A DNA stretch of 64,000 nt from Chiloscyllium plagiosum (Eukaryota). Below the pieces are notes generated by a model. That model saw only the letters and a program-made list of their open reading frames with translations, was not told the DNA's origin and ran no database searches. Shown here in pieces: positions 19,300 to 59,581 of the stretch; position 1 is the stretch's first letter, and each line of letters starts with the position of its first letter. Where the stretch lies: contig NC_057732.1 of NCBI RefSeq assembly GCF_004010195.1, forward strand, positions 39,097,644 through 39,161,643. The letters are read 5' to 3'. The translations under genes and the position numbers were made by a program.

Positions 19300-20412
19300 A
19301 ATGTAGAACAAAGAACATTACAGCGCAGGAACAGACCCTTAGGCTCTCCAAGCCTACACCGATCCGTAACCTCTATCTAAATCTGCCATCTATTTCCTAA
19401 GGATCTGTATCTCTTTGCTCCATTCATGTATCTGTCTCAATACATCTTAAGTGATGCTATCATTTCTGCCCCATCACCACCACTGGCAATGTATTCCAGG
19501 CACCCACCACCCTCTGCGTAAAATATTAGATTAGATTTCCTACAATGTGGAAACAGGCCCTTTGGCCCAACACGTCCACACCGACCCTCCGAAGAGTAAC
19601 CCACCCAGACCCATTTCCCATGTTTACCCCTGACTAATGCACCTAATTCTATGGGCAATTTCGCATGGCCAATTCACCTACCCTGCACATTTTTGGACTG
19701 GGGGACGAAACCGGAGCACCCGGAGGAAATCCACGCAGGCACAGGGAGAATGTGCAAACTCCACACAGACAGTCACCCGAGGGTGGAATTGAACCTGGGT
19801 CCCTGGCGCTGTGAGACAGCAGTGCTAACTACTGAGCCACCATGCCCCATATATTTCCCTAAATTCTTCCCCTCTCACTTTGAACTCGTGGCTCCTAGTA
19901 ACTGAGTCCTCCACTCTGGGAAAAAGTTTCTTGCTATCCACCCTGTCTACACCTCTCATGATTTTGTAGGCCTCAATCAGGTCCCCCCTCAACTACCTTC
20001 TTTTCAATGAAAATAATCTTAGCCTACTCAACCTCTCGTCATAGCTAACACCCTCCATACCAGGCAACATCCTGGTGAACTTCCTCTGCACCTTCTCCAA
20101 AGCATCCACATCTTTTTGGTCATGTGGCAACCAGAACCGTACGCAAAATTCCAAAGGTGGCCGAACCAAAGTTTTATACAATTGTGACATGACCTGCCAA
20201 CTCTTGTACTCAATACCCTGTCTGATGAAGGAAAGCATGCCGTATGCCTTCTTGACCACTCTACTGACCTGTGTTGCCGCCTTCATGAAACAATGGACCT
20301 GAACACCCAGATCTCTCTGTACATTAATTTTCCACAGGACTTTTCCATTTACTGTATAGTTCGTTCTGGAAATTGCATCTTCCAAAATGCATCATCTTGC
20401 ATTTGTCTGGAT
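19300..20412 (-). mobile_element. CR1/HER1-type LINE 3' part, interrupted by a SINE
   Basis: ORF 19993..20385 'QRDLGVQVH..KKAYGML..LYKTLVRPPLEFCVRFW..LEKVQRKFTRMLPG' is the CR1 ORF2 C-terminus. Confidence 0.9.
19525..19848 (-). mobile_element. HE1-type SINE nested in CR1
   Basis: Reverse complement of the HE1 consensus, with the (TTAGA)n tail at the left end. Confidence 0.9.
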
Positions 20413-26682: not shown

Positions 26683-27052
26683 TTATGCAGTTTCCTCAAA
26701 AAATATTGCTTCAGCTTAGCTGAAGGCTTAATCTCTACACAGTAATGATGAAATTCCAAGTCAAATTGGTCTAGTGTTTAATTACAACATAGAAATCTCA
26801 TATATGGAACTCTTCCTGCAATCACAGCTGCCTATAAACCAGTGATCGAGCAGTACAGGATTTGCACCCACAATGCTCTGCCACCTACTGTTTTGTCCAT
26901 GTGCCTTCATCCATTGTTCCACACGCTTTGTACACTAAGGTAATAGGCTACCTCATGCTATTCGCGAAATAGACTGAACTGGGTTAAGGTTTTCACATGA
27001 TGTAGTCAGTTTGGCTGGTGATCTCTGCCTAGTAACTTCACCTATGTGCGAA

Positions 27053-27098
27053 ATGAAAATTTTCTACACTTTTCTACAGCTGCTGTTACCATTTACAG
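27053..27098 (+). CDS. Gene 1 exon 1: signal peptide MKIFYTFLQLLLPFT(D)
   Basis: ATG at 27053 (in-frame upstream ATG at 27044), hydrophobic leader, ACAG|GTACTT donor in phase 1 matching the V exon; predicted cleavage TDG|QRD. Confidence 0.75.
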
Positions 27099-30000
27099 GT
27101 ACTTATTGAACTGAAGCGCTGTTTGTAATTGGGTGTGCATTAAACTTGAAGTTAGAGTTGCAGAAAACTATAGCGGAGAAATTTATCGTGAAAAGTAACA
27201 TTGCCAGTCACGATATGAATCAATTCTCTATAATTTAATTATTTCTCCACTGAGTTTTTAGTTACCACTGTTTTTTCAAACTAAAATAGGAGCTTTACAA
27301 TTTTGCCTATATCAGCTGCATTTAATATATTTACAAATATATATAAACTTTGTTTTTACTGATGTCTAAAGGAACTCCCACCCGGTTTTAATTGCCATTG
27401 TTTAATTTAATTGTGCAGCATGCCAAACCGTCTCTATGCTGATAAATGTAACTAAAATCTGTGGAAAACGTACTTAAACTTTCCAAAACAAATTTTGTAC
27501 CCGTTTGATTTCACTGGTGTTTAAATCACTTGTTCATGTGCCGCTCGTGAGGCCAGAGTTGATGTTCCTCAATTCACTTTTCATACAGTATTGTTTTGTA
27601 TCACTATAACATTTTTGTTGTAACATGGCATAATGTTTTCAGTTAGTAAGGTGGTTACAGACAATAATATCCTCCATTCTATATTATTTTGCTCTATATA
27701 AGTTTATTTTGTAAATAGATCTGCTTACTTGACCATTTCCCATATATTTCATTACCAGTGATGTTCTTATAATCACACACATTCGGCAACTTTGTGACCG
27801 TCTCTGACTTCTTAACACAATGTACAAAATTTCTCTGGTTTACTTTTAAACCCCTGTCGGAGCATCTTCAAAATTATGACCGAACAAGATTGAAAATATA
27901 TATAATATTTTGCATAAGAAACATAAGACACATTACTGTGAATACAGAAAAAAAACTCCTCTATTTGAACAAAGGGATTAAGTGAGTTAACTAGCCCTAT
28001 AACTGTAGTCCAGGCTTTTCATATATTCACATTCATTGCTAATAATGCATACATTTAACTTTTCTCAAGATGGACAGCGAGATTTACAACAGCTTGCGCA
28101 TCTTTCCGTCGAAAAGGGAGGCTTGATCTCGTTAGATTGTTTCCATTCAGTACCTAACCTACAAAGATTCGAAGCACGGTGGGTTTTCCGCAATAATAAC
28201 CAAGCACCTCCAAAGATCATTGCCAACCTATCGACCAGTGTATCCCAAGTGACTCATTATCGATATTTTGCAATGCATAATTTCCATAAGAAAGCATTCA
28301 CCTTAAGGATTACTGATGTTCAAGTCAGTGACACAGGACGCTACCACTGTGAGATGTTTCAGACCGCGCCTCCACCGAGTGGTAAAAGAATTGGCAAAGG
28401 AACGATGCTGAGTGTAACAGGTAACAATTTTACAATCGCATTCTTAATATGCCTTGGAATACTGGTGAAAACTTTAGCAGCAATGAATAAGTCATAAAGA
28501 TGAGACGCTTCAAGTTTGATCGCCACTCTATGCAGTTAGCTAATGTTAGCCAGCATGATGGTAGAATTGCTACACTTGACCCCAGGGCGCCAGGGTTTGT
28601 AAAGTTCTCAGTCTCAGTGCATTGTAAGAATTCCAGATGGAAATGTACATTAATAACAATGATGGAAGGCAGAAGGATCCTAATCCCCAGAACAGCTTTG
28701 TGGCTTTGACTTTCCAAGGTCAAACATGAAGAATATTCACAGGAGAAGTTCTGGAGAGAACCTCAGGTGCTGTACATCAGCAAAGGGTGATGTATTTTCA
28801 GAAATGATGAAGGGAAAATAATAATAGGAAAATGAGTCAAGAAAGTAAGTAACAAAAATAAACGGCAAAGCAACAGTCACACCAACGGTGCAAACTTAGA
28901 AAGCTATTATACATTTCCATCACAATAATTTACTCGTTTGTCGCGGGGAAATGGAGAAGAGACAATTATTCACCAATCTTTGGGATAAAAATGCTGGGAT
29001 ACGGACTTGTATCAGCATCAAATCGTAATATATAGGTTAAAATTCCATTTATTCTACTCTAAAGCGGATCATACTTTTCCCAATTCGTTAGCAGGATTAA
29101 TGCAAATGAAATAATGAGGAAAACTCTGACAGTACTAACAAATTTTCTCATTACTGAACACAACTTTCCTTCCTTGCCTACAATATTGAAGCAAAGATTT
29201 GTTGACTTCTTGAAGGTTTAGAAGTTCCCAACCCATCAACTTGGTTTTGGTTTGGTGATTCTACAGTCCGCCATAGAATCATAGGATCTCTACAGGTTTC
29301 ATGGAGTCCACACCGACCCTCCGAAGATCATCCCACCCAGACCCACTCAGTCCCTGTAACTCCACATTTCCCATGGCTAATCCACCCAGCCTGCACATCC
29401 CTGGGCATTACGGGGCAATGTAGCATGGCCAATCCATCCAATATGCACATCCTAGTAACATTCAGTTTGTTCTCGGCTTTGTAAAGACAGCCATGACACG
29501 CCCCTGCCGTTTTCTTTTAATAATTGTATATAAGTTGACAATTCCGCCGTAGGTTTCACCTCAATTCTCTCTTTAAAATAAAGAGCACACGGTAAACATT
29601 GCACTTGACAATAATTAAGTGACATTTCTTGATTTATGAGTTAAGCCTATCAACTTTTCGAAAACACTGGAAACAGGCAGCATGTCAGTGAGCACATCTG
29701 CAGAAGAAGGGACAAGTTAACATTTTAAGTATAATTCTTCAACAAATTTTTTGTACCCGCAGAGTTTTGTTTGACCTTTTCAGCGTGGTATATCATTGAA
29801 AGAAGCTAATTTCCTTTTGCAAAACGTTGGTGAGGGGCTGAGAACAGCAATGATTTTCCTCAGTGTCAATAAAATTTCATAATTAACCACGAAATTAAAA
29901 TATCTGCAGGGAACTCTACACATTGTGCCCGTCGCGCTCTTAACAAGTGTGTTAAGTCTTTGCTGAATTGAGTAATTACCAGCCACTCTTCTAACTTCAA

Positions 30001-33000
30001 CCATATGACGCTCTAATAATAAGAGTAGGAGAGGAGTCCTATGACGACCCCAGTGGCATCACCAACTTGACTTCAAGTGGGCATTTGCTGTTGTACCAGT
30101 CGATGCCGGGCGAATCACCAGTGTCCATTTGACACCGTTCTGCAAAATTAACCCGGCATGAACTGGGGAGTCGCTCTTTCGTGAGAACCTCCCGAATCCG
30201 TGTCTACAGGGTTGGGAAGAATCCACTCAAGTCAGACTTGTTGGGAATCCAATGTAGCTGACATGATTCGTGGGGTGGTGATGATATTGTTAGCGCTCTC
30301 GTGAGTGGTGCATACCTTGCTTATTCAATTAAGGCAATGGGAGGAAGGAATGGACAAAAGAAAACTGATAAGAGGTGGGAAGAAGACAAAACAGCAAGGC
30401 GCCGGGAGTTATTGGAGGGATAACATAGTGTTAATGGGGCAGGGACTGAAGAGCCTGGTGGAACTGTGAGTGGTTGAGCAAATAGAACATTGAGCAATTC
30501 GCATCCGATGCTAGAATAGGAGTCAGGCTGAAAATAGTAACAAATAATGGCAAATCTAACAGATCTGAAACAGCAAAGCAGATGGGATGGGAATAGAGTC
30601 GGTGGACCAAGAGGAATGTAAAATCAGGAAGAAGGGAAAGATTTCATGTGAGAAGTAAAGTGCAGTTGCCATTCTGGTGAAAGACTAAAACAAAACTAGA
30701 GAGTGAGTAAAAAGGAAAATATGTAAATAGTTGGTACCACTTAACCTGTGATTTATTACTAAAAAATCCCTTCTTTATGTTTAGATATCTGTTCAAGATA
30801 TCTGTTTACATAGTTTTAATAGCTTTGAAGTCTGAATGGTTCAATTGCACATTGAGCCGATATTAATCTGATTCTATTATTAATCTATTCTCTGCCCTCC
30901 TTTTTATAACTAGCTCCTCCTTCTCTTTGGCTATTTATATCTTCTAAAGAAACAGTTTCTTCATCTTCAGCTATAATCAACTGTTCAGCACATGATTTTT
31001 ATCCAAAAACAATCATAATGATGTTTCAAACAACCTGCCTCATCAACCAGCTCACCAATGAAAGCCAGATATCCAACCCTGATGGAATGTACAACTACAT
31101 AGCCATTGTTAATATCTCCACTGAAAACTGCAATAACTCAAACAAATTCACTTGTATAATTCAGCATCCTGCTTCACAATTCAAGACAAACCACACCATC
31201 CTCATTCATGTACACCCAAGAGATGAAGGTAAGATGTAACATTATCAACCTCTTCTGAATGTGTATCTGTGTTATTTTTCTTTTAATATGTGGTGGAAAA
31301 ATTGTTTCATTTGCTGTGGGTGAAATAGATGACGCACAATTTTGGGGCCAGAATATTACCAAGGATAGAGAATTGGCAAACTATCGGAAGACAGAGAGGT
31401 GGAGTAAAGGAGTAATTTTAAGAAGGGAACTTGCCACAGGGATCAATACTGGGATTGAAAAGCCTTTGCCTTTCTTCATCATATATACACCTCTAAGGTA
31501 AATTTGCCATAATTCTACTAGATCATAGGGCTGTTCTCTCATGAGAGAGAGAGAGATGATTGGTGGTGGTTTAGTCTGAGGGTCGCCATACCTCAAGCAA
31601 CCTGGGGGGGAAGAGGAGAGTCCTTCATAGAAACCTTAGCTGGACCAGGAATTGAACCAATGCTGTTTGTGTTACTCTGTATCCTAAATCAGCTATCCAG
31701 TCAACTGATCTAACCAAACCCCTTCAGTTTCCAAACTCAGTTCTGAAGAAGGGTCACTGGACTTGAAATGTTATCTCTGTTTTCTCTCCATAGATACTAC
31801 CAGACTTGCTGAATTTCTCCAGCAATTTGTCTGTTTGTTTCAGACTCCCAGCATCTGAGTTCTTTGCTTGATCTAAATGTATTCAATTTGAGTTTTAACA
31901 GGTTGTCTGCATAATTCATACACACTCATATTTTACAGATCATAATGGACATCTTTGGATGCTGCCATTCATTTTACTTTCCATTTGCGGTGGAATAGCT
32001 TGTACTATTCTTCTTGTGCTTTTTCTCATAAAATACATACATGGTAAGTGGTTCTCCAGCAAATAAAATACTGTAGTTTACTTCCTGAGGAACTTAATCT
32101 GTTTTCAAACACTGATAGTGCAACCGCAATTCTTACTCCCCCTTCCCCTGGAATCAGCTATCTACCAACATCCCATTAGATTTATTTATATTCACTCAAT
32201 TGACTGGAGATATAAAATATTATCATAATTACTAATAAAATACTCCAAGTTTTGCATCTCCCTGGTTAGGTGTATCTCTGCCTTTTGTACAAAATCTCTG
32301 ATTACAATCACCTTATGCAATCCCTTTAGTTGTTCAAAGTCTTGCATTGTACCAGTTGCTCAATTGCCTTTTTTCTAAAAGAACAGATTTTCGACAAACT
32401 CTGTTCATAATTAAGCTTATACGTGGATTTGGTTTTGATTCCACCTTTCTGATTCCAAACCACTGTCTCTAAATCCACTTGTAAATGATGTCTCACTGAT
32501 TGGGTACAATGTTCATTCTTTCATCACTTATTTAAGAATGTGGTCACCTCGTGTACTTTTTAAAGATCTTATTGTTATATGCCATATTAAACATTTATCA
32601 GGGAGTGATCATGACATGAATTATTTCCCCAGTCAAAAAACACTATTGCTCATGGGTTACTTTCATTTTGAACAATAATAGCTGAGATTACAGATTATGT
32701 ATGACGATCGCTATATTCTTCATCTGACATTTCTCTGAATGTTTAATTCTAAATAGTTTTTTAAAATTCACTAACTTTGATTCTATTTATGTATTATGCT
32801 ACTTTCCCATGATATAAAGACTGTACCAGTTGTGCTAAACACCAATACATCAAGATTTTACATGATTTAATTTAATAATATCCAATCATGAGCTTAAAGT
32901 TATCATCTATGATTCTCATTTGGACCTGGAGGTAACAAAACCAGATTACAATGTGTTCATAAGCAGCACATATATTTTGTTTGAAAAATATTAATAGGAG

Positions 33001-36000
33001 CTCATTTAAACATGGTTATCATGACCATTATAACAATATTTAAATAATACTAACAGTTGGCAGTTATGCTTTCCTTTATTAGTCAGAGTATTGAGTATAG
33101 GCGTTGGGAGGTCATATTGCAGCTATACAGGACGTTGGTTAGACCACTTTTGGATTATCACATACAATTCTGGTCTCCTTCCTATCGGAAGGATGTTGTG
33201 AAACTTGAAAGGGTTCAGAAAAGATTTACAAGGATGTTGCCAGGGTTGGGTGGTTTGAGTTATAGGGAGAGGTTGAATAGGCTGAGCCTGTTTCCCCTGG
33301 AGTTTCGGAGGCTGAGGGGTGACCTTCTAGAGGTTTATAAAATCATGAGGGGCATGGATAGGACATATAGACAAAGTCTTTTCCCTGGGGAGGGGGAGAC
33401 CAGAATCAGAACTAGAGGGCATAGGTTTAGGGTGAGAGGGGAAAGATATAAAAGAGACCTAAGAGGCAGCTTTTTCACGCAGAGGGTGGTGTGTGTATGG
33501 AATAAGCTGCGAGAGGAAGTGGTGGAGGCTGGTGCAATTGCAACATTTAAAAGGCATCTGGATGTGTAAATGAATGGGAAGGGTTTGGAGGGATATGGGC
33601 CAGGTGCTGGCAAGTGGATTAGGTTGGGATGTCTGGTCGGCATGGATGAGTTGGACTGAAGGGTCTGTTTCTGTCGCTGTAAATCTCTCTGACTCTAAGT
33701 ATTTTGAGTCAGCAACGGTTTGGACCGTGGTATTGCTGAACTCCCTGAATTATATGTAAGTTCAATTCAATGCTTCTTCTGCTTGTGGTTTAGGGGTTCC
33801 CTGTATGGGCGGGTCACAAGCACACTGAAGTTGGCAGGCCTGCTAAACAACTAAGATAAGATTTTGTTTTCTACCCCGAAGTGTTATCATACACAACTGA
33901 GTATCTTCCTATCACCAGAATCACTGTGACGTTTTGTTTTGCCTTTCTTTTAAACTAGCAACCATCACCTGTAAAAACATCCATGCAACTAATTGAACAT
34001 TTGCAAGCAAAGCCCTTTATGGACAATACAAACCATCAAATGAGAGAGGAAGGAGGATTAGGGAGAACAGGAAGGGACTAAATCAAAATGGTGTTGGAAG
34101 GGGAAATAAAGTACTATATCCCCAATAGTGCTAACCTCTCTCTAAAGGCATCACATGCTCCTTCTCCAATGACACTCAGGCACAAATATATCCAAGAACG
34201 CTGCAAGAGCCTAGAGAAGAAATTGCGGTGGCCTTGGCTGATATTTTTGCTTTATCATTAGCCACAGGTGACCAGGAAGGTTGAGGAGTGCAGGGCGGTG
34301 GACTATATAAATTTCAGTAAAGCCTTTGATTACAATGCACATGGTAGACTACTCTGGAAGGTTAGATTGCATGGGATCCAAGGTGAGCTGGCAAATTGGA
34401 TACAAAATTGGCTTGATGGTAGGAAGCAAAGGGTAATGGAAAGATGTTTGTCAGACTGGAGACCTGAGACTAGTGGAATGCCTCAGAGGTTGGTACTGGG
34501 CCCATTGCTGTTTGTTATCCATATCAATGATTTGCATGAGAATGTACAAAGCATGATTAGTAAGTTTGCAGATGACACTAAAATAGGTGGTGTTGTGGAC
34601 AGTGAGGAAGGTTATCAGAAATTGCAGCAGGACCTTGATCAGCTGGGGAAGTGGGCTGAGAAATGGCAAATGGAGTTTAATTTGGATAAGTGTGAGGTCT
34701 TGCATTTTGGAAAATCAAATCAAGGTAGAAGTTTCACTGTAAATGGTAAGGCCTTAAGGGGTCTGGTGGAACAGAGGAATCTTGGAGTTCTCTGAAAGTG
34801 GTGTCACAGGTAGACAGTACAGTGAAGAAGGCTTTTGGCACACAGGTCTTCATCAGTCAGGGCATTGAATATAGAAGTTGGGGAGTTATGTTGCAGTTAT
34901 ACAGGACATTGGTGAGGTCGCACTTTGAGTATTATGTTCAGTTTTGGTCACCTTGTTATAGGAAAGATGTTATTACACTGGAAAGGGTGCAGAAGAAATT
35001 TACAAAGATGTTGCCTGGATTCAAGTTATAGGGAGAGGTTGAACAAGCTAGAACTTTTGTCTTTAGAGCGTAGGAGACTGAGGGTGGATCTTATAGAGGT
35101 GGACAAGAACATGACAGGTATGAATGCACTCAGTCTTTTTCCCAGGGTTGGGAACTAGAGGGCATCAGTTTAAGGTTAGACGGGGAAAAAAAACAAAAGG
35201 GAGCCTGAGGGGCAATTTTTTTACATGGAGGTTGGTGCACATATGGAATAAGCTGCCAGCAGATGTGGTTGAGGTGGGTGCATTAACAACATTTAAAAGG
35301 CATTTAGACAAATACATGGATAGGAAGAGATTAGAAGGATATGAAACAAGTGCAGGGAAATGGAGTTAGCATGGATGAACATTTTGGTCAGCATGGATCA
35401 GTTTGGGCCAAAGGGCCTATCTCCGTGCTATAGGACTCTCTGACTCTATGACTCTATGGATGTAACTGCAGAAGAGGAGCAGACAGTCAGCAGAGATGAC
35501 TCCCTCCATAGCCTGCTGCCTGGACATGGTATAGCCAGCCCAACCAAGCCCAAGAACAGACCCACAAGAAAGCCCTCCAATCTGCCTACACTCCTCCATA
35601 CCAGATGTCCAAAAATCAGAAGTATAGAGCTGAAGCGTAATCAAAAACAAAACAAAATGTTTTACAAATAACTAAAGATGGGGTGCAAAAGTCCACAATC
35701 AACATAAATTTAGTCCCTGGACTCCACAGCGCCACAAAATAAACAGTTAAGGCTGTTAGTCCATGAACTACTGCAATCTGTGGTTATGCAGGACTGCTGT
35801 ATTCAATACCCTGCAGGTCTCTGATGGAAAGTGGGAGTGTCCCATGAAGAGAGCTCTTGATTGGGGTTCTCAATCACCTGGTAACAAATAATCAAGCCAA
35901 AGTATCCATGCAGCTGACGTAAGACTTGAGGTGGACGGTGTGCACCAGCAGCCTTTACAAAAACAAAAGCCTCTTTACAAGGTGGAAAGATATGCTACAC

Positions 36001-38908
36001 ATAAGAGGCATCTTAAGGGATAAATGTAGGGGAATGGGTCTGGGTGGGTTGCACTTCGGCGGGTCGGTGTGGACTTGTTGGGCCGAAGGGCCTGTTTCCA
36101 CACTGTAAGTAATCTAATCTAATCTAATCTCAGGTTGTGAGGGAGGTTAAGGACCCAAGATTTTTTTTGATACTGCAGTTAAACAATCTACTTGCTTCAA
36201 TGATCCAGTTGCTTGTGCAAGGGGAAACTTTCTGGCTGATCAGTGAGTCAACCAGTGAAACAGGGCCCAAAAGTCAACTTCTTTAATAAGTCACTCTTTC
36301 TTTAATTTCAGTTAGTTTCACAAGCAGCAAAATCACCAACATTCCTTTCCTTTCATCGACAATGACAATCTGCTGACCTAGACAGGTGCTAATTGCAACT
36401 TTCTTAACTAAACATTTTAATGGATCTGTTGGGCCATTATGACATTGGGGCAGGGACTCTAGTTTTGGGCCATAAAGTTAAAAATCACGCACAACAAGAC
36501 TGACCCCTCCACTTTTAAAAAAAAATTAACCTATTTTTCTAAACAAGCTGTTCAAAGATGTTATTACACCACCTCTGGAGTTGGTGGGACTTGAACCCAG
36601 GTCCTCGTCCAGGGGTAGCAACAAGACCTCTGCACCACAAGACCCACCCACCACCTTCATTTCCTTTCTCAATTTTTTTTTGTTTTTCAAAAACTGCCAC
36701 AATACCACTGCACCCAAGAGGGCCAGCACTAATGTTTATATTTTTCCCCAAATCAACTGTGGCAATTTTTTCCTCAGTGTCACAGTAAGAAGACACCATT
36801 GTGTGTATACATTAATATTCATTTTTTCCACCAGTAGGAAAACACCCATGTGGCCAATTGAATATTAACAAGCAAAGGCTGTTAAGGGCAATGTTGTCAT
36901 TAAAATGGGAGGGGGGGTGGCGGTGGTGATGATGTTAGGAGAGAAGGAGGGGCTTAAATCAAAATGGAGTTGGAGGCAGAAATAAAGTACTGTATCCTCT
37001 GTGGTACCCACCTCTCCCTAAAGGCATCCAGAGCATTGATGGACACACATGTTCCATCTCCAATGACCCCCAGGCTTGTCCCTCCACTTTCTTAATGAAA
37101 TGCTTAATTATTACAAAACAGACTTTTAGATGTCACAATTAAATGTTCAATGTTTCAGAGTTAATTGTACTACCAATGGTCCTCAACTAATAATTCAAAA
37201 ACACTTTTCATTTGTGTTTAAATCATTCCATTACGAATGAGATTAATAAATCATAAGTATTTCTTTCCAGGTTCCTTTTTGCTAACATTAATCTTTGTTG
37301 TCACAATTTGTAACCAAATTTAAGTAATTACATTAAGCAAATATATTAAGCAAATATATATTCTTCTCATGCACATTTGTACATGTTTTATTGTAAATCT
37401 TTCCCTTTGGTTTTTGCCTGGCGTCCAGAACCATTTCTGCCTTAATATTGTTTATACTTCTCATTTTTGTTTTGTTACACGTGAAGAAATCAAATCAAGA
37501 AAAATGAGTACAATTAAAGTAAAAAAATAAACATATGATTAAACATCAATGCACCTAACAACATACAATTATATTCTTCTATGTCATAATTTTTATTTTA
37601 TATAGGAAGAAAAGGAACTCAAGGAAGAAAAGGAAATCATGCAAGTAATCAAAGTTTGCGCTGTAGACAAGATAGCATCATAAATGTAAATTTAATTTTT
37701 ACAATATGGACACATAATTTAGGGTCCTAAAACCTGGCCTTATTCTTGATTCTTCTGCAACTACCTATTAAACATATTTAACAAAATTTTGTTCATATCC
37801 AACCAGGCCAGATAAAGCAGACTGACTTGGCAGAACACAGCATAGACTCATACAATCCCTACATTGTGGAAACAGGATATTCAGTTCATTGAGTCCACAC
37901 CAACCCTACAAAAAGCAGCCCACCTCCACCCAGCCCCCTACCCCATCCCTGTAACTCTGCAGTTCCCGTGACTAACCCACACAGCCTGAACATCCCTGGA
38001 CACTGTGGGCAATTTAGCATGGCCAACCCAGCTAAGCTGCACATCTTTGAACTGTGGGAGGGAACTGGAACACCAAGAGGAAACTCAAGCAGACACGGGG
38101 AGAATGTGCAAACTCTACACAGCCTCCCAAGGGTGGAATCGAACCTGAGTCCCTGGTGCTTTGAGGCAGCAGTAGTAACCACTGTACCACTATGCTGTCC
38201 CAAGCCAATGGCAGATAGCCAAACTTTTGATGAGTTAAGGAGGGTGGAGGATCGGAGCCCAGCCAGGAAAACAATAGGAATAGGTTTCAGCAAATGACCA
38301 GAAGGAACTGACACCAGGCGTTTGCTAGCAGGGGCTGATACTGAAAAACACAATAAATACATGAAAGAATAATATAGGTAGCAAGAATGTGAACATTTCT
38401 AGTCATAGATCTTTGCAATGACTGACAAATTGGGAACTGAAGCTATATGATAAGACCTAACTCAGATTAGTTTGATGGTACTAATTTTGAATGTCACAGT
38501 TGTTACAATATAAGCCATTTACTCACTGAAATCATTGTTAATATGTCAAAACATTTTTTAAAATTAACAAATTGAAATCACACCTTTGTCTGCTTGGCTC
38601 AGTTTATTTAATGAGAAATTCAGATGACAAGAGCAACAAAGTACAAAAAGTAAGAGATAAATTGAGGTAAAAAGAGTAACAGGTCCCGATTTTTAAAGTG
38701 TGCAGTTGGTATGAGTAATAGGTGCTCAGAAAATGAAGAACAGAAAATGTAAATACAAATGAATATCTTTCCCATTTTTCAGGAGGAGAGCAGCGGGAAT
38801 AATATATGTTATGCAGAACTGCAATTGGAAAACTTGCAGCAGACATTAAAACAAAAGGAAGAGGAGACTGTCTACAGTTCAGTGCTTCACTCAAATTCTG
38901 GTGAATAG
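27053..38908 (+). CDS. Gene 1 (whole model): VJ-C1-TM-ITIM/ITSM Ig-superfamily inhibitory receptor (SIRP-like / antigen-receptor-like), ~342 aa
   Basis: join(27053..27098,28070..28420,30914..31228,31939..32043,37606..37644,38603..38649,38783..38908). All introns are GT-AG with phases 1,1,1,1,1,0 and the frame is open throughout (1029 nt including stop). Confidence 0.85.
28070..28420 (+). CDS. Gene 1 exon 2: germline-joined VJ-type IgV domain
   Basis: tttctcaAG acceptor and ACAG|GTAACA donor; LDC (B strand), ARW (C strand), FTLRITDVQVSDTGRYHC (E/F strands), J-like IGKGTMLSVT. Confidence 0.95.
30914..31228 (+). CDS. Gene 1 exon 3: Ig C1-set domain
   Basis: Pyrimidine tract + tAG acceptor and GAAG|GTAAGA donor; APPSLWLF..INCSAHDFYPKTI..NPDGMYNY..FTCIIQHP carries the C1 motifs CxxxxFYP, NxDGxY and FxCxxxH. 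Confidence 0.92.
31939..32043 (+). CDS. Gene 1 exon 4: transmembrane segment
   Basis: ttttacAG acceptor and CATG|GTAAGT donor; DHNGHLWMLPFILLSICGGIACTILLVLFLIKYIH, with no charged residue in the membrane. Confidence 0.92.
33057..33697 (+). mobile_element. CR1/HER1 LINE 3' end in gene 1 intron 4
   Basis: ORF '[53 protein letters not shown]' followed by the CR1 3' UTR. Confidence 0.92.
34205..35455 (+). mobile_element. CR1 LINE RT and 3' end in gene 1 intron 4
   Basis: 'FSKAFD..GMPQRLVLGPLLFVIHINDL..ISKFADDTK..KWQMEFN'; (GACTCTAT)n-type tail. Confidence 0.92.
37606..37644 (+). CDS. Gene 1 exon 5: basic juxtamembrane cytoplasmic exon (GRKGTQGRKGNHA)
   Basis: T-rich tract + atAG acceptor; A|GTAATC donor, with an alternative in-phase donor after 37653; phase 1 to 1; basic stop-transfer residues. 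Confidence 0.6.
37845..38178 (-). mobile_element. HE1-type SINE in a gene 1 intron
   Basis: Reverse complement of the HE1 head, core and tail. Confidence 0.85.
38603..38649 (+). CDS. Gene 1 exon 6: cytoplasmic exon (IYLMRNSDDKSNKVQK)
   Basis: cctttgtctgcttggctcAG acceptor (alternative in-frame acceptor at 38624) and AAA|GTAAGA donor; supplies the phase 1 to 0 bridge needed to reach the ITIM exon. Confidence 0.6.
38783..38908 (+). CDS. Gene 1 exon 7: ITIM + ITSM terminal exon
   Basis: ctttcccatttttcAG acceptor; EESSGNNICYAELQLENLQQTLKQKEEETVYSSVLHSNSGE*. ICYAEL fits IxYxxL and TVYSSV fits TxYxxV. Confidence 0.88.
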   Translation, partial: EESSGNNICYAELQLENLQQTLKQKEEETVYSSVLHSNSGE

Positions 38909-39246: not shown

Positions 39247-39252
39247 AATAAA
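39247..39252 (+). terminator. Candidate polyadenylation signal for gene 1
   Basis: First AATAAA I found downstream of the stop (~340 nt), followed by T/GT-rich sequence; it lies at the tail of a repeat fragment. Confidence 0.4.
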
Positions 39253-53793: not shown

Positions 53794-56700
53794 GTAAGTG
53801 CCTTGTCTTTTTTTTCAGGAGTTTCTCACGTGTAATTGACTGTCTGGTTAAATCTGTCTGGATCATGTTTAGTTTTGGTTTTAACAAGTGATCTCTTGCT
53901 GAAACACAATGCTGCAGATTTTGTTTTAACAATAAACCAAAAGTTTACTAACAAAGGAAACAAAGATAAAAATGAAGAAACTAAATCATCTAACCGTAAC
54001 ACACATTCAAAGATCTTTAAATGCTTTGTAAGAGTGTAATCCCATAAATCCCAAAATGCACTTTTATAAATTGAAAATAAAATAAAACAGCTTTTGTTTT
54101 TACAATACTCATGAAATACATACATTAAAACCCCTGTATCTAACACCATGATAGGTTTAATTTGCTGTGACTTCAACTTACTGACTTGAACTGTGGATAG
54201 TTTCTTCTTGGAACTATTATCCACCTTAGTTTGAATATAACCACTTCAGGGTTTTATCCCAACATTCTGGTCTGTGATAACATTGCTCTTCATTCTATAA
54301 GGATACTGAGTTCCCTATGTCCTGTCCTTGCCTCTTGGGCTGTACATCCATTCGAGGGCTTTCCAGGACTTCCTCAGTCAAAGAAAACCTAAGAACAAAT
54401 AGCTGCCTGTCAAAAGCTATGTTTTTTTCCCTTAAGCTTAAACAAACAAGTTCCAAAAGTCTCTAACAAATGTTGAAACTCCAGTATTTATGTTGGTGAG
54501 TCCAAAACAAGCCAAAATAATCAAACTTTTATTAATGGTGTACAAAAAGTTTGGCTTCAAAAACTGCTTTACTAACAAAAAAAATCACTATGGCTTCGGA
54601 AATATTTAAGTTAATTATTAATTTCAGACACACAGAAAACCCACAGGCCGGTTACTCAAAACCAAAATCCCAAACGTAGAATAAATGGCATTACATATAA
54701 ATGACAAGAGTTTACACCACACTGATATATACAATGAATGAGAATCTAAGGAAGACAGATATGAAATTAGTAAGCCTGTAGAGAAATTGATGTCAGTGAG
54801 AATTTGTTTTGGATCAAACTGCAATAGTCAAGCAGAAAAATAGTTAGTGCCATTTGTGATTCTTTTCTTTGAAAGGAAAGCAGTATTAATGGCACATGAA
54901 CAATGGGGCTATAATTTAAAAAGTTAAGCTCAAGCTGAGGGAAAACAATTTACATTAAATAGCAATACATCACTTCTTTTCAGAAATCCCAAATGCTGAA
55001 AATAATAAGTTTTAAAGGACAATTACCACTCTTGTGTGGACAAATACATCAGCCTTTGTGAACAGTAAGAAAACACAAGCCATATATGTAACATTTGGGA
55101 TTCAGCAGTCATACATCCTTAAAATAAGTTTGACTATTTGTAAATAATTTTAAGGTGGTTTATTACATTTATAAAGAAAACAGTTTAGATATAGTGCTTA
55201 GCTAAATAGGCAGGAAAAGTTTACAATCTGTGACAGGGGAAGGCAGTTCTCCAATACCAGTGACAAACGGACACTTGGCACAGAACGTATTGACCTCAGG
55301 AGGGAGTGATGGAAGCATTCTGCTCTCTCCAGGTGAAGTGTTGGGGTGGTTCTCCTTTCTTGGTCCATTTTCTATCTGAAGAAAACAGCAGTCTGGTGAG
55401 AACTGCCACATCATGATGACTGCAATCCATCTCTGAACCCTTCTTGATTTACTTTATTTCCAGGTGATATACCCTATTTCAAAATCATTCCTTTGAACCT
55501 TTCTAACTGCTGAATACAGGCTTTGCATTCTTTCCAAGACGAAATACATAGGGCCTCAGTATAATATCCAAATGGTAGCATTTTATTCAGTAACACACTG
55601 AAGTGGCAGTCATGCACTCAAATCCTGAAATAGGATTTGAAACTGTCCATATTGACCAATTACATCACAATCTAAATATTGTTGGTCCAGATACTAGAGT
55701 TGAGTAATCATGATTTTACATTTAGACAGGGTTGTAATGGCAGATTGGAAGATAAGATTTGACTTGTGTGGGAAAGGGAGAGCTTTTACACCTTTATCTT
55801 GTAGATTGGTTCCTTTTGGGAATTTCAATAGATTGGGCAGAAACCATTAAATGGAATGGATGTTCTGAATGGGGCAAATGACCACTTCTTGTTTCATCCT
55901 TATTTGTATATTGTATGTCTAATATTTTCATTAGGTGATGGATCCTTCATCCAGATCTGCGGCGTCTTAGGTGAAGACATCTTACTGCCCTGCACCTTTA
56001 CTGTTGCATCCAACTTTAGTCTGCAGCAACTTGTCATTACCTGGCAGTGGACAGTCAGTTTAATTGTGGTTCATAGCTACTACAATGAGAAAAACCATCC
56101 AGAGTATCAGGACCCAGCATTCAGAGGACGTACTGAACTATTTCCCGAAAACTTCCCCAATGGAAATGCTTCACTCAGATTGAAAGAAGCAGCCACATCA
56201 GACATGGGGAACTACACCTGCTTTGTAATTCAGGAGGATGGAAAAGGCTACATTGAAAATTTGGTGGAACTGAAATTATATGGTAAGCTTGTAGATATCT
56301 CCCAGCCGTAAATAAAAGTACATGCAAAACTTGTTGAGAGAATTGTGCCCAGGCAGGGAATAATCACCTGGAAATTGTTTCAAATCTTTCACATATTTAA
56401 ATGTTTCAGGGAGATTCATGAGAATGGAGCTTGTTAGACTGTAAGAAAGTTATATCATATATTCAGTCACTTGTGTGCTGTGTAGAAGATGAACTACACA
56501 TCAGTTTGAGTAAACCGTTTAACTATCAATTATCCTGTTCGCTTAAATAATTTGTCATGGGCCCCCAACTTTCTTTAGTCTGAGAATACCTTTAGGTTTG
56601 AAGTGTTCTGCCCAACTTCACCTGAAACTGCTTTTTTTTTTAGTCAGCTTATTAACAAGACTTAATGGACAGCAGGCATAAGCCTGACACTTGGAAGCTA

Positions 56701-59581
56701 ATGAACCTAAAAGCTCAAATCTGACAGGCATGATGGAAGGTTGTCATATTCAAGAATTTCTTGATGTCCAGTTCAGTTTGGATGACCTCTGCCTCTGATC
56801 CTTGTGCTACCATCTGGGAGATAGAGGGACCTGCTTTGTCCCAACTTCCAGGATGTTGTTGCCTCCCACCCTGCAGACAGAGACAGGGTGTTAGTTGAGA
56901 CCCATTTCTTTTCAAAGATGGTGCTCTTCTGATATTGGTGGAGGAGGATAAGATGGAATTGCTAGTTATTAACGTGTCCCTTGGTACGAGAAATCCCATA
57001 ATCTCAGTGGAAATCCAGCAATCCCAAGCAAGAACATGAGCACAGAGCCAGTGTTGCAATCTTCCTGACCCTTTATCCCTTACTTTTGGTGATTGAGTTT
57101 GAGGGGAAAATCAGACCCCAATCATCCTGCTAACTCCCAGACATTTTATGCTCCAGTTAGCTGTTCAATGAAGCTTCTGAGCTGGTGGTCACACATTTAC
57201 TAATAATTAATTGAGGAAACATTAAGGATTTCATTAGATTTATTTGATAAAGGGGAGATTCTAAGGTCTCAAGTACAATTTAAAGTTTAGCACCCACAGG
57301 CATTCAAGATTATTATATAATGTAAACTGAATGGCATTACCTATACTTATGAAATATTATACTCAAATGAATGTTAGATATTTTAGGATAAAACACATTT
57401 CAGACAGACACAATGTAGCAGAAATGGCCATAGCATAAATGAATGAATAAAAATAAATCATAGTCTAATGCCACCATATGGTTAATTGAAGTATATAGAT
57501 CTTACTGAAATATCATTACATTCAGATGCAAACTGTAGACCTTAAGTTGGTATCTGGTACTTTTTAACAACCCTATATTCTAATAATTTAACTATTAAGT
57601 AGTGCAAAAAATTTAGTTGTTTATTTAGGCAAAAGCTGAAAACAGAAGCTAAATTGGTACTTGGGAAATATGGCATGACTGTCTGGAGTCTGGGTTTAGT
57701 GCAAGTTTTGGTCCTTATTACTGATTATCATAATTTAATTTGTCTGGAGGCAATAAAGAAGATTTATTCATATTTAGCACTTAATTTCTGTGGAGAAGAT
57801 TTTGTGGACTCTTCTAAATCACTTACAGTGCAGGCCTCTGCCTGGTAGATGCACATTAGCGTGTTATAACAAGGGCCAAAGCATGGAGTAAAGTGTGCAC
57901 AGTTCTTGCATACAGCACTTGAGGTTGGACGAGGTCCAGAGAAGGAGAAAGCACTGAACTAAAAGGCACAGGCACCATTCTTCCATTCCTCCCGTCCCGC
58001 TCTCCTGCAGTAGGCAGTGCCATGGCATAGTGTCATGTCCTTCTCCCATTCTTTGTCCAAAACGAATGGGAATCACTAACAAGATTGCCTTGACCAGGTA
58101 CTCCCTTTCTGCTGCTGACTCCAAGAAGAGTGTCAGAGCACTTAACTCCCTTTTTTTAGGTGAACTCCTCAGAGAATTCTTTGAATAAGTGTTGCTGTAA
58201 AGTTATTGAAGAGTTCAGTCTCTAAGAAAGTCTTACAATTTATTCAGTAGCAGCTTCTCAATTGCAGCAGCAAATTGAGATGGTCAAGAGTATCCATTTA
58301 AACAGTATTTCAAATCCATAACAACACTTTGTTTACTTCCAAGTAAATTGTTGGGGGATGGTATTAGAACAAGTCTCCTAATTGAGCACTGTAGGCATTT
58401 TTAGTATCAGTCAACCCTTTTACAAGCTTCTGAATAGCTGTTCTAAATTGTTCTTTTACTAAGATGACATTCTGCTCTAAACACAGCTGAACTGGCATTT
58501 CGGTTTAAGAACAAAGAACAAAGAAAATTTACAGCCCAGGAACAGGCCCTTTGGCCCTCCAAGCCTGAGCCAATCCAAATCCACTGTCTAAACCTGTCGC
58601 CCAATTCCTAAGCATCTGTATGTTTCTGCTCCCCACCTATTCATGCATCTGTCCAGATGCACCTTAAATGAATCTACCGTGCCTGCCTCTACTACCTCTG
58701 CTGGCAACGCATTCCAGGCACCTACCACCCTGTCTATAAAGTACTTGCCATATATAGCCCCATTAAACTTTTCACAACTCACCTTGAAAGTGTGACCTCT
58801 CGTTATTGAATCCCTCACCCTGGGAAAAAGCTTATCTCTATCCACCCTGTCTATATCCTTCATGACTTTGTAGACCTCAGTCAGGGCCCCCCTCAATCTC
58901 CTTTTTTCTAATGAAAACAATCCTAACCTAGTCAACCTCCCTTCATAGCTAGCACCTTCCATACCAGGCAACATCCTTATAAACCTTCTCTGCACTCTCT
59001 CCAAAGAGTCCACATCCTTTTGGCAGTGTGGTGACCAGAGCTGTACACAGTATTCTAAATGTGGCCAAACTAAAGTCTTGTACAATTTTAACATGACCTG
59101 CCAGCTCTTATACTCAGTATTCCGTCCGATGAAGGCAAGCATACCATATGCCTTCTTGACCACTCTATCCACCTGTGCAACCACTTTCAGGGTACAATGG
59201 ACCTGAACTCCCAGATCTCTCTGCTCATCAACTTTTCCCAAGGCTCTTCTGTTTACAGTATAGTTTGCTCTGGTCACTGTGATCACATCAGAGGATAATT
59301 AACACCTGAACATGCTAGTTAAGATAGCTCATTTCATGGGAAGAAGAGTGAACATTGTATCTCAGCTGTTAATGGAGTGATTAAACCATAATTTTATACT
59401 TCTAAATATCCTAGATAAACCACTGGTCATTGGAAATGACGATACCGCAGTTTTGCACAGACAAAGAGCAATTTATACACTTGGATTCATAAGTGGAGCA
59501 CTGATTGTTTTAATTGGATTTAGAGTTGGATATTCGGAAATGCAAAAGAAGAAGCAACAAATTTCCAACGAGAGTGAGTAA
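53733..59581 (+). CDS. Gene 2 (whole model): B7-family (CD276/HHLA2-like) single-IgV type I membrane protein, ~191 aa or slightly longer
   Basis: join(53733..53793,55935..56282,59415..59581), or the last exon ends at donor 59573 and splices onward; phase-1 GT-AG introns and an open frame. Confidence 0.75.
55935..56282 (+). CDS. Gene 2 IgV exon, B7/butyrophilin family
   Basis: ttttcattAG acceptor and TATG|GTAAGC donor; GEDILLPCTF..FSLQQLVITWQ..VHSYY..QDPAFRGRTELFP..NGNASLRL..DMGNYTCFV are B7-family signatures shared with CD276, HHLA2 and VTCN1. Confidence 0.95.
58507..59272 (-). mobile_element. Young 5'-truncated CR1/HER1 LINE in a gene 2 intron
   Basis: 232-aa ORF 58588..59286 is the CR1 ORF2 C-terminus (QRDLGVQVH, LEYCVQLWSP, ITRGH); tail repeat aagaacaaagaacaaagaa. 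Confidence 0.93.
59415..59581 (+). CDS. Gene 2 stalk/TM/cytoplasmic exon
   Basis: atcctAG acceptor, phase 1; DKPLVIGNDDTAVLHRQR-AIYTLGFISGALIVLIGFRVGY-SEMQKKKQQISNESE*; a perfect GTGAGT donor follows 59573. Confidence 0.7.

What the first reader, a model, noticed from the sequence alone, without database searches (positions are those of the whole stretch)
27053..38908. Non-rearranging antigen-receptor-like gene: germline VJ + single C1 + TM + ITIM/ITSM
Seen in sequence: V and the J-like G strand (IGKGTMLSVT) sit in one exon with no RSS, followed by one C1-set exon. This is the ectodomain layout of a TCR or Ig light chain, but with an uncharged TM and an inhibitory tail. Established: C1 domains are largely limited to Ig/TCR/MHC/B2M/tapasin/SIRP/B7H6-type proteins, and germline VJ-C1 genes are discussed as models of the pre-RAG antigen-receptor ancestor. 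SIRP-like features are present (CxxF after the second Cys, GxGTxLSV-xAxPS, CxxHxFxP, YAxL..TxYxxV), but SIRP-alpha has two C1 domains. The ORF track shows only fragments of this gene.
Basis: partly seen in the sequence, partly recalled or inferred. Interest (0 to 1): 0.8.

Follow-up and report, generated by a model that had tools for sequence, protein, structure and literature searches.

The report
Shark germline V-C1 inhibitory receptor gene
This is a real, intact shark gene for a membrane receptor built like a single antibody light chain or T-cell-receptor chain but fixed in the germline and carrying a brake-type tail; it belongs to an old, barely studied vertebrate family that mammals appear to lack.

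Summary
On the + strand, six exons with AG/GT borders and matching phases (27044-27098, 28070-28420, 30914-31228, 31939-32043, 37606-37685, 38783-38908) encode leader, V domain with a J-like strand in one exon, one C1 domain, an uncharged TM and a tail with two tyrosine motifs. Pfam: V-set 5.2e-13; C1-set 1.5e-9 against C2-set_2 3.8e-4. Each exon translation is found letter for letter in a RefSeq model of Chiloscyllium plagiosum, auto-named "immunoglobulin kappa light chain-like".

Predicted relatives exist in 10 further shark and ray species, a chimaera, gar, axolotl and turtles. All are uncharacterised or auto-named. They share YxCx6PPPx5GxG in the V domain and a C1 with an extra cysteine pair and no strand-C tryptophan.

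It is not SIRP, UrIg or CD28 by architecture. It may be the cartilaginous-fish member of the PRARP family (recalled, untested). The strict ITSM is found in this species only.

The scan noted similar V-C1 genes on other pieces of this genome.

A B7-H3/H4-like V exon lies about 17 kb downstream.

The parts
27044..27098 (+).
   Evidence: identical to residues 1-18 of RefSeq model P0160
28070..28420 (+). V-set exon with the J-like G strand (IGKGTMLSVT) in the same exon; phase 1 at both ends
   Evidence: Pfam V-set 5.2e-13; AG/GT borders; structural neighbours are TCR and antibody V domains, Z 16.8 to 14.4
28369..28377 (+). PPP codons in the FG (CDR3-like) loop, part of YxCx6PPPx5GxG
   Evidence: same motif as given for CD28X/CTLA4 in PMC11599192
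30914..31228 (+). C1-set exon (CSAHDFYP ... FTCIIQHPA), with an extra Cys pair (QTTC, TENC) and no Trp in strand C
   Evidence: Pfam C1-set 1.5e-9 vs C2-set_2 3.8e-4; PDB phmmer best hits are Ig heavy constant domains and UrIg2; alignment A3
31939..32043 (+). Stalk and transmembrane exon (DHNGHLWMLPFILLSICGGIACTILLVLFLIKYIH), with no charged residue in the span
   Evidence: Hydropathy scan; sequence and borders
37606..37685 (+). First cytoplasmic exon, 80 nt (RKGTQGRKGNHASNQSLRCRQDSIIN); shifts phase 1 to phase 0; RefSeq isoform X2 ends it at 37640 with a GC donor
   Evidence: tblastn with catshark P0003 tail; borders
38783..38908 (+). Last coding exon with ICYAEL (38804-38821) and TVYSSV (38867-38884), stop at 38906-38908
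39247..39252 (+). First AATAAA after the stop, likely poly(A) signal (inferred)

Best explanation
This is an intact single-copy gene of the bamboo shark for a type I membrane receptor. Its ectodomain is one antigen-receptor-type V domain with a germline-joined J-like strand, followed by one C1-set constant domain. Then come an uncharged transmembrane helix and a short tail with two ITIM-type tyrosines 21 residues apart.

It is the orectolobiform orthologue of a gene family found across jawed vertebrates: sharks, rays, chimaera, gar, axolotl and turtles. The family has its own signature, YxCx6PPPx5GxGTxLxV in the V domain and a C1 domain with a second cysteine pair and no strand-C tryptophan. 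It is separate from SIRP, UrIg/UrIg2, CD28/CTLA4 and the rearranging chains.

The likely mechanism is inferred, not shown. A conserved, non-polymorphic ligand is bound through the invariant proline-rich FG loop. The two tail tyrosines are then phosphorylated by Src-family kinases and recruit tandem-SH2 phosphatases (SHP-1/SHP-2), which damp activation of the cell that carries the receptor. Because C1 domains normally pair, the receptor probably works as a homodimer or with a partner chain.

From memory, the architecture and the range of species fit the PRARP family (Fu et al. 2019). If that is right, this is its cartilaginous-fish member.
For: - Exon structure: six exons with AG/GT borders and consistent phases, 1032 nt in all.
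- Identity with an annotated model: each of the six exon translations is found exactly in RefSeq model P0160 of C. plagiosum, cyt1 in its short form.
- Domains: V-set 5.2e-13 and C1-set 1.5e-9; V-set and C1-set each in 14 of 14 family members.
- Fold: Foldseek aligns the model over about 225-246 columns with two-domain TCR and Fab chains; the V domain scores Z 16.8 to TCR V domains.
- Homologues with the same layout and tail: S. canicula P0151 344 aa, R. typus P0157 343 aa, N. bancroftii P0153, P. japonicus P0156, H. perlo P0158, H. francisci P0159, S. torazame P0154, gar P0075.
- Family signature and invariant columns.
- Tree: 15 family rows form one clade with support 95/97 against 5 other VJ-type proteins, with orectolobiform, carcharhiniform and bony-vertebrate subclades.
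- Single copy in the window: tblastn with the V and C1 exons finds nothing else there but a weak match of 29 residues to the B7-like V exon.
Against: - Expression and splicing therefore rest on predicted models, which may lean on each other by homology.
- The nearest species' model (Stegostoma, P0001) lacks the TM exon and reads the tail exons in another frame.
- The AlphaFold model is good for V (pLDDT 78-93) but poor for C1 (block means 38-65) and for the tail.
- The turtle proteins lack the tyrosine pair, so inhibitory signalling is not a property of the whole family.
- The strict ITSM is in 1 of 10 chondrichthyan species.
- Ligand, phosphatase binding, dimer state and expressing cell type are all untested.
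- The PRARP link is recalled only. No PRARP sequence or paper text could be obtained, and no hit carried that name.
Confidence: 0.7

Rival explanations
1. It is a SIRP-family gene, as NCBI's automatic names for the catshark and electric-ray orthologues suggest: a SIRP-alpha-like inhibitory receptor that has one C1 domain instead of two.
For: The family profile's best PDB hit is human SIRP-alpha ectodomain 2wng_A (E 1.5e-24, 89.7 bits), with SIRP-gamma at 5.2e-21. The C1 shares DGTYN and FYP with SIRP-alpha domain 3. The tail motifs are of the xxYAxL ... xxYxxV type.
Against: The SIRP-alpha score is the sum of two stretches (47.9 and 40.4 bits) in which the single family C1 is used twice, against d2 and against d3. 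Ordinary light chains reach 66.5-74 bits in one V-C1 stretch, and UrIg2 reaches 88.4 bits, so there is no special affinity for SIRP. The defining V-C1-C1 layout is not met. A bichir protein auto-named SIRP-beta-1-like falls outside the family clade. The PPP...GxG signature is not seen in the SIRP-alpha alignment.
Confidence: 0.1
2. It is a relative of the CD28/CTLA4 family that kept or gained a C1 exon. It binds a B7-family ligand through its PPP loop, possibly the product of the B7-H3/H4-like gene 17 kb downstream.
For: The FG loop fits YxCx6PPPx4/5GxG, the motif given for CD28X and called reminiscent of CTLA4 (PMC11599192, section 20). PPP, or PAP in one ray, is conserved in all 14 aligned members. 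Mouse/human CTLA-4 (1dqt_A) is among the V-exon PDB hits (E 2.5e-4). The downstream V exon's best PDB hits are CD276 and VTCN1.
Against: Every CD28-family member described has a single V domain and no C1 (abstract of PMC11599192). Antibody light-chain and TCR-alpha V domains score better than CTLA-4 (1e-7 to 1e-6 against 2.5e-4). The structural neighbours are TCR V domains. The stalk has no cysteine, and the tail has no YxxM or EYEDM. Linkage to a B7 gene in one species proves nothing, and synteny in other species was not checked.
Confidence: 0.12
3. The locus is not a working gene in this species: a silent or decaying copy whose model was carried over by homology.
For: No RNA run on record holds the V exon. 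The reads check failed. The intron between TM and tail is 5.5 kb and full of retroelement pieces. The Stegostoma model is aberrant.
Against: All six exons are open, with intact AG/GT borders and phases. Conserved residues of the family are all kept: both V cysteines, W, PPP, GxG, four C1 cysteines and both tail tyrosines. The terminal branch is short (0.12).
Confidence: 0.05

Closest known systems
[quoted passage not shown] The reference was seen in PMC10751288; the content is recalled and the paper is not held.
   Same: As I recall it: non-rearranging VJ-type V domain, a V-C1 layout in bony fish, amphibians and reptiles, TM, an ITIM-like tail, and absence from mammals. The range found here (gar, axolotl, turtles) fits that, and one turtle species has two paralogues (P0083 and P0135).
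   Different: No sequence comparison was possible. I do not recall cartilaginous-fish members or a PPP...GxG signature being reported. PMC10751288 speaks of PRARP as a VJ gene 'in the MHC', and MHC linkage of this window was not established.
SIRP-alpha (PTPNS1), PDB 2wng
   Same: VJ-type V domain, C1-set domains, tandem ITIM-type tyrosines and an uncharged TM. It is the best whole-chain PDB score for the family profile.
   Different: SIRP-alpha has two C1 domains and four tail tyrosines. It has no PPP loop and no extra C1 disulfide. Its score advantage comes from counting the single C1 twice.
UrIg / UrIg2 of elasmobranchs (PMC12227049; PDB 9dmx)
   Same: Non-rearranging, with a single-exon VJ domain followed by C1-type domains, in sharks. 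It is the second-best PDB hit (3.7e-24).
   Different: By the legend of Fig. 4C UrIg has N-terminal C domains in the plural, and I recall three. UrIg2 has 9 to 11 C domains (PMC12227049 section 7). No ITIM is mentioned anywhere in that paper ('itim' 0 occurrences). The gene here has one C1 and an inhibitory-type tail.
CTLA-4 / CD28X (CD28 family; PMC11599192)
   Same: YxCx6PPPx4/5GxG in the FG loop and G strand, and a checkpoint-type role is plausible.
   Different: The CD28 family has a single V domain and no C1, and CD28X signals through EYEDM. The gene here has a C1 domain and an ITIM pair. Overall V similarity to CTLA-4 is lower than to Ig light-chain or TCR-alpha V domains.
Ig light chains and TCR chains
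   Same: V-C1 ectodomain, phase-1 exon borders, J-like GxGTxLxV and the FYP motif in C1. Foldseek and VIA give them as the best structural matches. NCBI's automatic name is 'immunoglobulin kappa light chain-like'.
   Different: There is no V/J split and no RSS. It has its own TM and signalling tail, no interchain cysteine in the stalk, and an invariant CDR3-like loop.

Membership tests
Non-rearranging VJ-C1 IgSF receptors of the PRARP type | V-set domain with the J-like G strand encoded in one exon | tested here: met
   Exon 28070-28420 is continuous through IGKGTMLSVT. V-set matches profile positions 5-109 of 109, E 5.2e-13.
Non-rearranging VJ-C1 IgSF receptors of the PRARP type | No recombination signal sequence at the V/J boundary | tested here: met
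   There is no nonamer in 28000-28600. The one heptamer-like CACTGTG at 28345 lies in the His-Cys codons.
Non-rearranging VJ-C1 IgSF receptors of the PRARP type | One membrane-proximal C1-set domain | tested here: met
   C1-set 1.5e-9 against C2-set_2 3.8e-4. C1-set is matched in 14 of 14 members. The AlphaFold confidence for this domain is low.
Non-rearranging VJ-C1 IgSF receptors of the PRARP type | TM plus cytoplasmic ITIM | tested here: met
   By motif only: ICYAEL and TVYSSV, with an uncharged TM. No binding test was done.
Non-rearranging VJ-C1 IgSF receptors of the PRARP type | Sequence orthology to chicken PRARP1/PRARP2 | not testable with these tools
   The paper is not held. No protein named PRARP appeared.
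SIRP family | Ectodomain of V followed by two C1 domains | tested here: not met
   There is only one C1 exon between V and TM. The orthologues of 323-345 aa have one C1.
SIRP family | Closer in sequence to SIRP than to other V-C1 proteins | tested here: inconclusive
   2wng_A tops the list at 89.7 bits, but as 47.9 plus 40.4 bits with the C1 used twice. UrIg2 scores 88.4 bits and light chains 66.5-74 bits.
CD28/CTLA4 family | Single extracellular V domain | tested here: not met
   A C1 domain follows the V domain. The family definition is from the abstract of PMC11599192.
CD28/CTLA4 family | PPP in the CDR3-like loop followed by GxG | tested here: met
   YHCEMFQTAPPPSGKRIGKG. The motif is as given in PMC11599192 sections 14 and 20.
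UrIg / UrIg2 | VJ domain followed by several C1-type domains (UrIg: more than one N-terminal C domain; UrIg2: 9 to 11) | tested here: not met
   There is one C1 here. The UrIg2 domain numbers and the plural 'UrIg N-terminal C domains' are from PMC12227049 section 7. A count of three for UrIg is recalled.
Rearranging Ig light / TCR chains | Separate V and J segments flanked by RSS | tested here: not met
   V and J-like parts are in one exon, with no RSS.

The most novel reading that the evidence does not exclude
The PPP-loop V-C1 family is an ancient B7-binding checkpoint receptor. On this reading it is a sister of the CD28/CTLA4 lineage that still carries the C1 domain of the antigen-receptor precursor. 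In sharks it is genetically linked to its ligand, the B7-H3/H4-like gene 17 kb downstream, as NKp30 is to B7H6. It would then tie the origin of co-inhibition to the VJ-C1 ancestor of Ig and TCR, and would name a receptor for a B7 branch whose receptor is (recalled) still unknown in mammals.
Probability: 0.1. Interest if true: 0.8.

Novelty: new member of a known kind. Interest (0 to 1): 0.45.

Why it matters
Non-rearranging genes with a joined VJ exon and a C1 domain are the closest living stand-ins for the gene that the RAG transposon split to create antibodies and T-cell receptors. Sharks are the oldest lineage that has both systems.

This locus shows that one such gene is kept as a single orthologue from sharks to turtles. 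Its 'CDR3' loop is invariant and proline-rich, like the B7-binding loop of CTLA-4, and in cartilaginous fish and gar it has an inhibitory-type tail.

That makes three questions directly testable: what the family binds, whether it pairs through its C1 domain, and whether it is the same family as chicken PRARP.

It is not a new kind of gene. Pipelines already annotate it under misleading names: kappa light chain-like, SIRP-alpha-like, CEACAM1-like.

Tried and rejected
- **C1 exon alone in the search for homologous proteins**: nothing, as expected from the length window.
- **Search for a PRARP name or text.** Paper searches for PRARP, 'antigen receptor precursor', 'putative remnants of an', 'nonrearranging IgSF', 'IgSF genes in chicken', VJ-C1/VJC1/'V-C1 structure', and SIRP+elasmobranch+ITIM+C1-set found only passing mentions, in PMC10751288 and PMC11599192. 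The 2019 PRARP paper and the 2023 UrIg paper are not held.
- **Turtle protein search**: found turtles only.
- **ESM Atlas**: gave generic V-C1 clusters (tapasin-related, SIRP, Ig-like), which decides nothing.
- **Second copy in the window:** none found.
- **IgC exon for the B7-like gene:** none found up to 64000.
- **RSS:** rejected.
- **SIRP membership:** rejected on architecture. **CD28 membership:** rejected on architecture. **UrIg membership:** rejected on domain number.
- **Reference trees not done.** A V or C1 tree with curated SIRP, NKp30, CD28, TCR and IgL references was not made, because no such sequences were available as stored proteins and sequences from memory are barred.
- **Synteny in other species not checked** (see below).
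- **Supplements.** The supplementary data sheets of PMC11599192 could not be seen. They may show whether this family was met and set aside in that survey.
- **Joined model.** The spliced model was never joined by me.
Full report
**What is there.** The window is vertebrate DNA with about 40% G+C and many retroelement pieces. On the + strand between 27044 and 38908 lie six exons:

| Exon | Coordinates | Length |
|---|---|---|
| Leader | 27044-27098 | 55 nt |
| V | 28070-28420 | 351 nt |
| C1 | 30914-31228 | 315 nt |
| Stalk and TM | 31939-32043 | 105 nt |
| First cytoplasmic (cyt1) | 37606-37685 | 80 nt |
| Last (cyt2) | 38783-38908 | 126 nt with stop |

- Every internal border is AG...GT.
- The first four junctions are phase 1, as is usual for immunoglobulin-superfamily genes.
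- The 80-nt exon brings the frame to phase 0 for the last exon.
- The total is 1032 nt, 343 codons plus stop.
- The first AATAAA after the stop is at 39247.

**The observation.**
- The V exon matches Pfam V-set at 5.2e-13 over profile positions 5-109 of 109, so the G strand is part of it.
- The next exon matches C1-set at 1.5e-9 (38.5 bits) and C2-set_2 only at 3.8e-4 (20.9 bits).
- Against PDB sequences, the V exon is most like antibody light-chain and TCR-alpha V domains (about 3e-7 to 4e-6), with CTLA-4 at 2.5e-4.
- The C1 exon is most like Ig heavy-chain constant domains, and UrIg2 scores 1.3e-9.
- V and the J-like IGKGTMLSVT are in one exon.
- In 28000-28600 there is no nonamer, and the single heptamer-like CACTGTG is formed by the His-Cys codons of YHC. 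There is no RSS.
- The TM span has no charged residue.
- The tail has ICYAEL and TVYSSV with the tyrosines 21 residues apart.
Without it, TM joined to 38783 would read GGEQRE and stop. I found it with the catshark homologue's tail (44% identity over 25 residues, weak on its own). It is confirmed by its borders, by its phase, and by its presence in the RefSeq model of this species.

**It is an annotated gene.**
- A full HMMER scan of 1.84 billion representatives with the V exon gave 161 proteins at E up to 0.001. The best was a Stegostoma tigrinum model at 78% identity.
- A profile search then returned P0160, "immunoglobulin kappa light chain-like isoform X2" of Chiloscyllium plagiosum.
- Each of my exon translations is found in P0160 exactly. 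P0160 ends cyt1 at 37640, where the genome has CAT|GCAAGT.
- The window is therefore from this species or a near-identical one.
- Full-length models with the same order of parts exist for Rhincodon (343 aa), Scyliorhinus canicula (344 aa), S. torazame, Pristiophorus, Heptranchias, Heterodontus and Narcine. A partial model exists for Mustelus, and Hemitrygon has an isoform without C1.
- Their automatic names disagree: kappa light chain-like, SIRP-alpha-like, CEACAM1-like, uncharacterized.

**The family.**
- Outside cartilaginous fish, the same layout is found in gar (P0075, 323 aa, with two tail tyrosine motifs), sea and pond turtles (P0098, P0176-P0180), and axolotl (P0028, two V-C1 units). 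V-only fragments come from Callorhinchus and several turtles.
- The 14-row alignment has these invariant or near-invariant columns: both V cysteines, the strand-C tryptophan of V, D-x-G-x-Y-x-C, P-P-P, G-x-G-T-x-L-x-V, and in C1 the C-x4-F-Y-P motif, D-G-T, and four cysteines.
- Two of the four C1 cysteines are additional to the canonical pair. One lies after strand C, where Ig C1 domains have tryptophan. The other lies seven to eight residues before the strand-F cysteine.
- V-set and C1-set are each matched in 14 of 14 members, C2-set_2 in 3 of 14.
- In a maximum-likelihood tree of 20 rows, the 15 family rows form one clade (95/97) against 5 other VJ-type proteins. Those five are a bichir SIRP-beta-like, a newt NCR3-like, a white-shark V-only ITIM protein and two unnamed ones.
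- The inner groups follow taxonomy: orectolobiforms 100/100, carcharhiniforms 98/99, gar plus turtles 94/98.
- Long branches meet among the outgroups and at gar plus turtles, so only the family clade itself should be relied on.
- I left out of that tree the axolotl tandem protein, the V-only fragments and the isoforms.

**Structure.**
- AlphaFold2 with the 14-row alignment gave pLDDT 78-93 for the V domain, but block means of only 38-65 for C1 and under 50 for the tail.
- Foldseek aligned the model with two-domain TCR and Fab chains over about 225-246 columns at E about 1e-11 to 6e-13.
- VIA against 48,161 representatives, effectively the V domain alone, put TCR V domains first (Z 16.8, rmsd 2.2 over 107 residues) and antibody V domains within 2 Z.
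- This supports an antigen-receptor-type V domain. It adds little for the C1 domain.

**Which known family?**
- With the family profile, the best PDB chains are human SIRP-alpha (89.7 bits), UrIg2 (88.4) and multi-domain antibody constructs. Plain light chains reach 66.5-74 bits.
- The SIRP-alpha score is two stretches, 47.9 bits (V plus the start of d2) and 40.4 bits (the family C1 against d3). The single C1 is counted twice.
- There is thus no particular closeness to SIRP, and the V-C1-C1 layout is not met.
- UrIg has more than one C domain and UrIg2 has nine to eleven (PMC12227049, section 7 read), so that layout is not met either.
- The CD28 family is defined by a single V domain (abstract of PMC11599192), which is also not met.
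- Yet the FG loop here fits the motif that paper gives for CD28X and calls reminiscent of CTLA4, YxCx6PPPx4/5GxG (section 20 read).
- The family that fits by architecture and range is PRARP. I saw only its reference and two passing mentions (PMC10751288, passages; PMC11599192, passage).
- The description of PRARP as V-C1-TM-ITIM in bony fish, amphibians and reptiles is my recollection of the 2019 abstract and comes from no call.
- I could not obtain any PRARP sequence, so the identity is open. I put it at roughly even odds.

**The tail.**
- Both tyrosine motifs are kept in all 10 chondrichthyan species with a tail on record, and in gar.
- The first motif is I/V-x-Y-x-x-L throughout.
- The second is T-V-Y-S-S-V only in this species. 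The other nine species have I or V at -2, which is an ITIM rather than an ITSM.
- The turtle tails lack the pair.
- Inhibitory signalling through SH2 phosphatases follows from established knowledge of ITIM pairs at this spacing in PD-1, BTLA and SIRP-alpha (recalled). It is not a result obtained here.

**What was not checked.**
- Reads. I kept that place out of all later searches.
- Contig collections. I did not look for the gene or its flanks in them, so neither expression nor synteny in other species was tested.
- RNA runs. None of the ten runs that hold the V exon is on record as RNA.

**Surroundings.**
- About 16.7 kb after the poly(A) signal, on the same strand, lies a B7-family V exon (55946-56290; V-set 2.7e-10). 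Its best PDB matches are CD276/B7-H3 (about 3e-14 per domain) and VTCN1/B7-H4 (3.2e-17).
The linkage is real in this window; the pairing is speculation.
- Earlier notes also list other VJ-C1 genes and clusters on other pieces of this genome, one of them followed up with a similar verdict. A look-up by sequence with my V exon was blank, which means nothing.

**Verdict.** This is a real, intact, already machine-annotated but unstudied gene. It is a member of a conserved V-C1 receptor family that is neither SIRP, UrIg nor CD28 by definition, and it may be PRARP. It is interesting mainly for its CTLA-4-like invariant loop on an antigen-receptor-like V-C1 frame and for its B7 neighbour.

Noticed in passing
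window 55946-56290 (+), inside ORF 55856-56311: This is a B7-family V exon. Pfam gives V-set 2.7e-10. The best PDB matches are CD276/B7-H3 (1.1e-32 for the two-repeat chain, about 3e-14 per domain), VTCN1/B7-H4 (3.2e-17), MOG and butyrophilins. No IgC exon was found between it and the window's end.
   Followed up: partly
window 28381|28382: A donor-like G|GTAAAA sits exactly between the PPPS loop and the J-like GKRIGKGTMLSVT. The catshark RefSeq isoform X2 (P0003) lacks exactly that piece (PPPS|ARPS, in phase), as if the equivalent donor were used to skip the J-like strand.
   Followed up: partly
window 37640|37641: RefSeq isoform X2 of this species (P0160) ends the first cytoplasmic exon here at a GC donor (CAT|GCAAGT). 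That removes 15 residues, and the long form to 37685 matches the whale-shark length of 343 aa.
   Followed up: yes
window 33057-35369 (+), in the intron between TM and first tail exon: There are pieces of a LINE-type retroelement in the sense orientation. ORF 34268-34795 matches RVT_1 at 4e-16. Similar ORFs lie at 58588-59286 (-) and 19993-20385 (-).
   Followed up: partly
P0001 (Stegostoma tigrinum model), compared with window 37636-37680 and 38787-38843: The closest species' RefSeq model has no TM exon and reads both tail exons in another frame. It is either a mis-prediction or a TM-less form. The catshark isoform X3 (P0152) is a clean in-frame TM-skipped form.
   Followed up: no
P0028 (Ambystoma mexicanum, 488 aa): The axolotl relative carries two tandem V-C1 units, each with the PPP loop and the four-cysteine C1, before one TM. 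It has no tail tyrosine pair.
   Followed up: no
other pieces of the same genome (earlier notes s1-883833, s1-885739, s1-885746, s1-885754, s1-885755, s1-885753, s1-883826): The scan lists further non-rearranging VJ-C1 genes, some in tandem clusters said to pair activating and inhibitory forms. Their relation to this single-copy gene is unknown.
   Followed up: no
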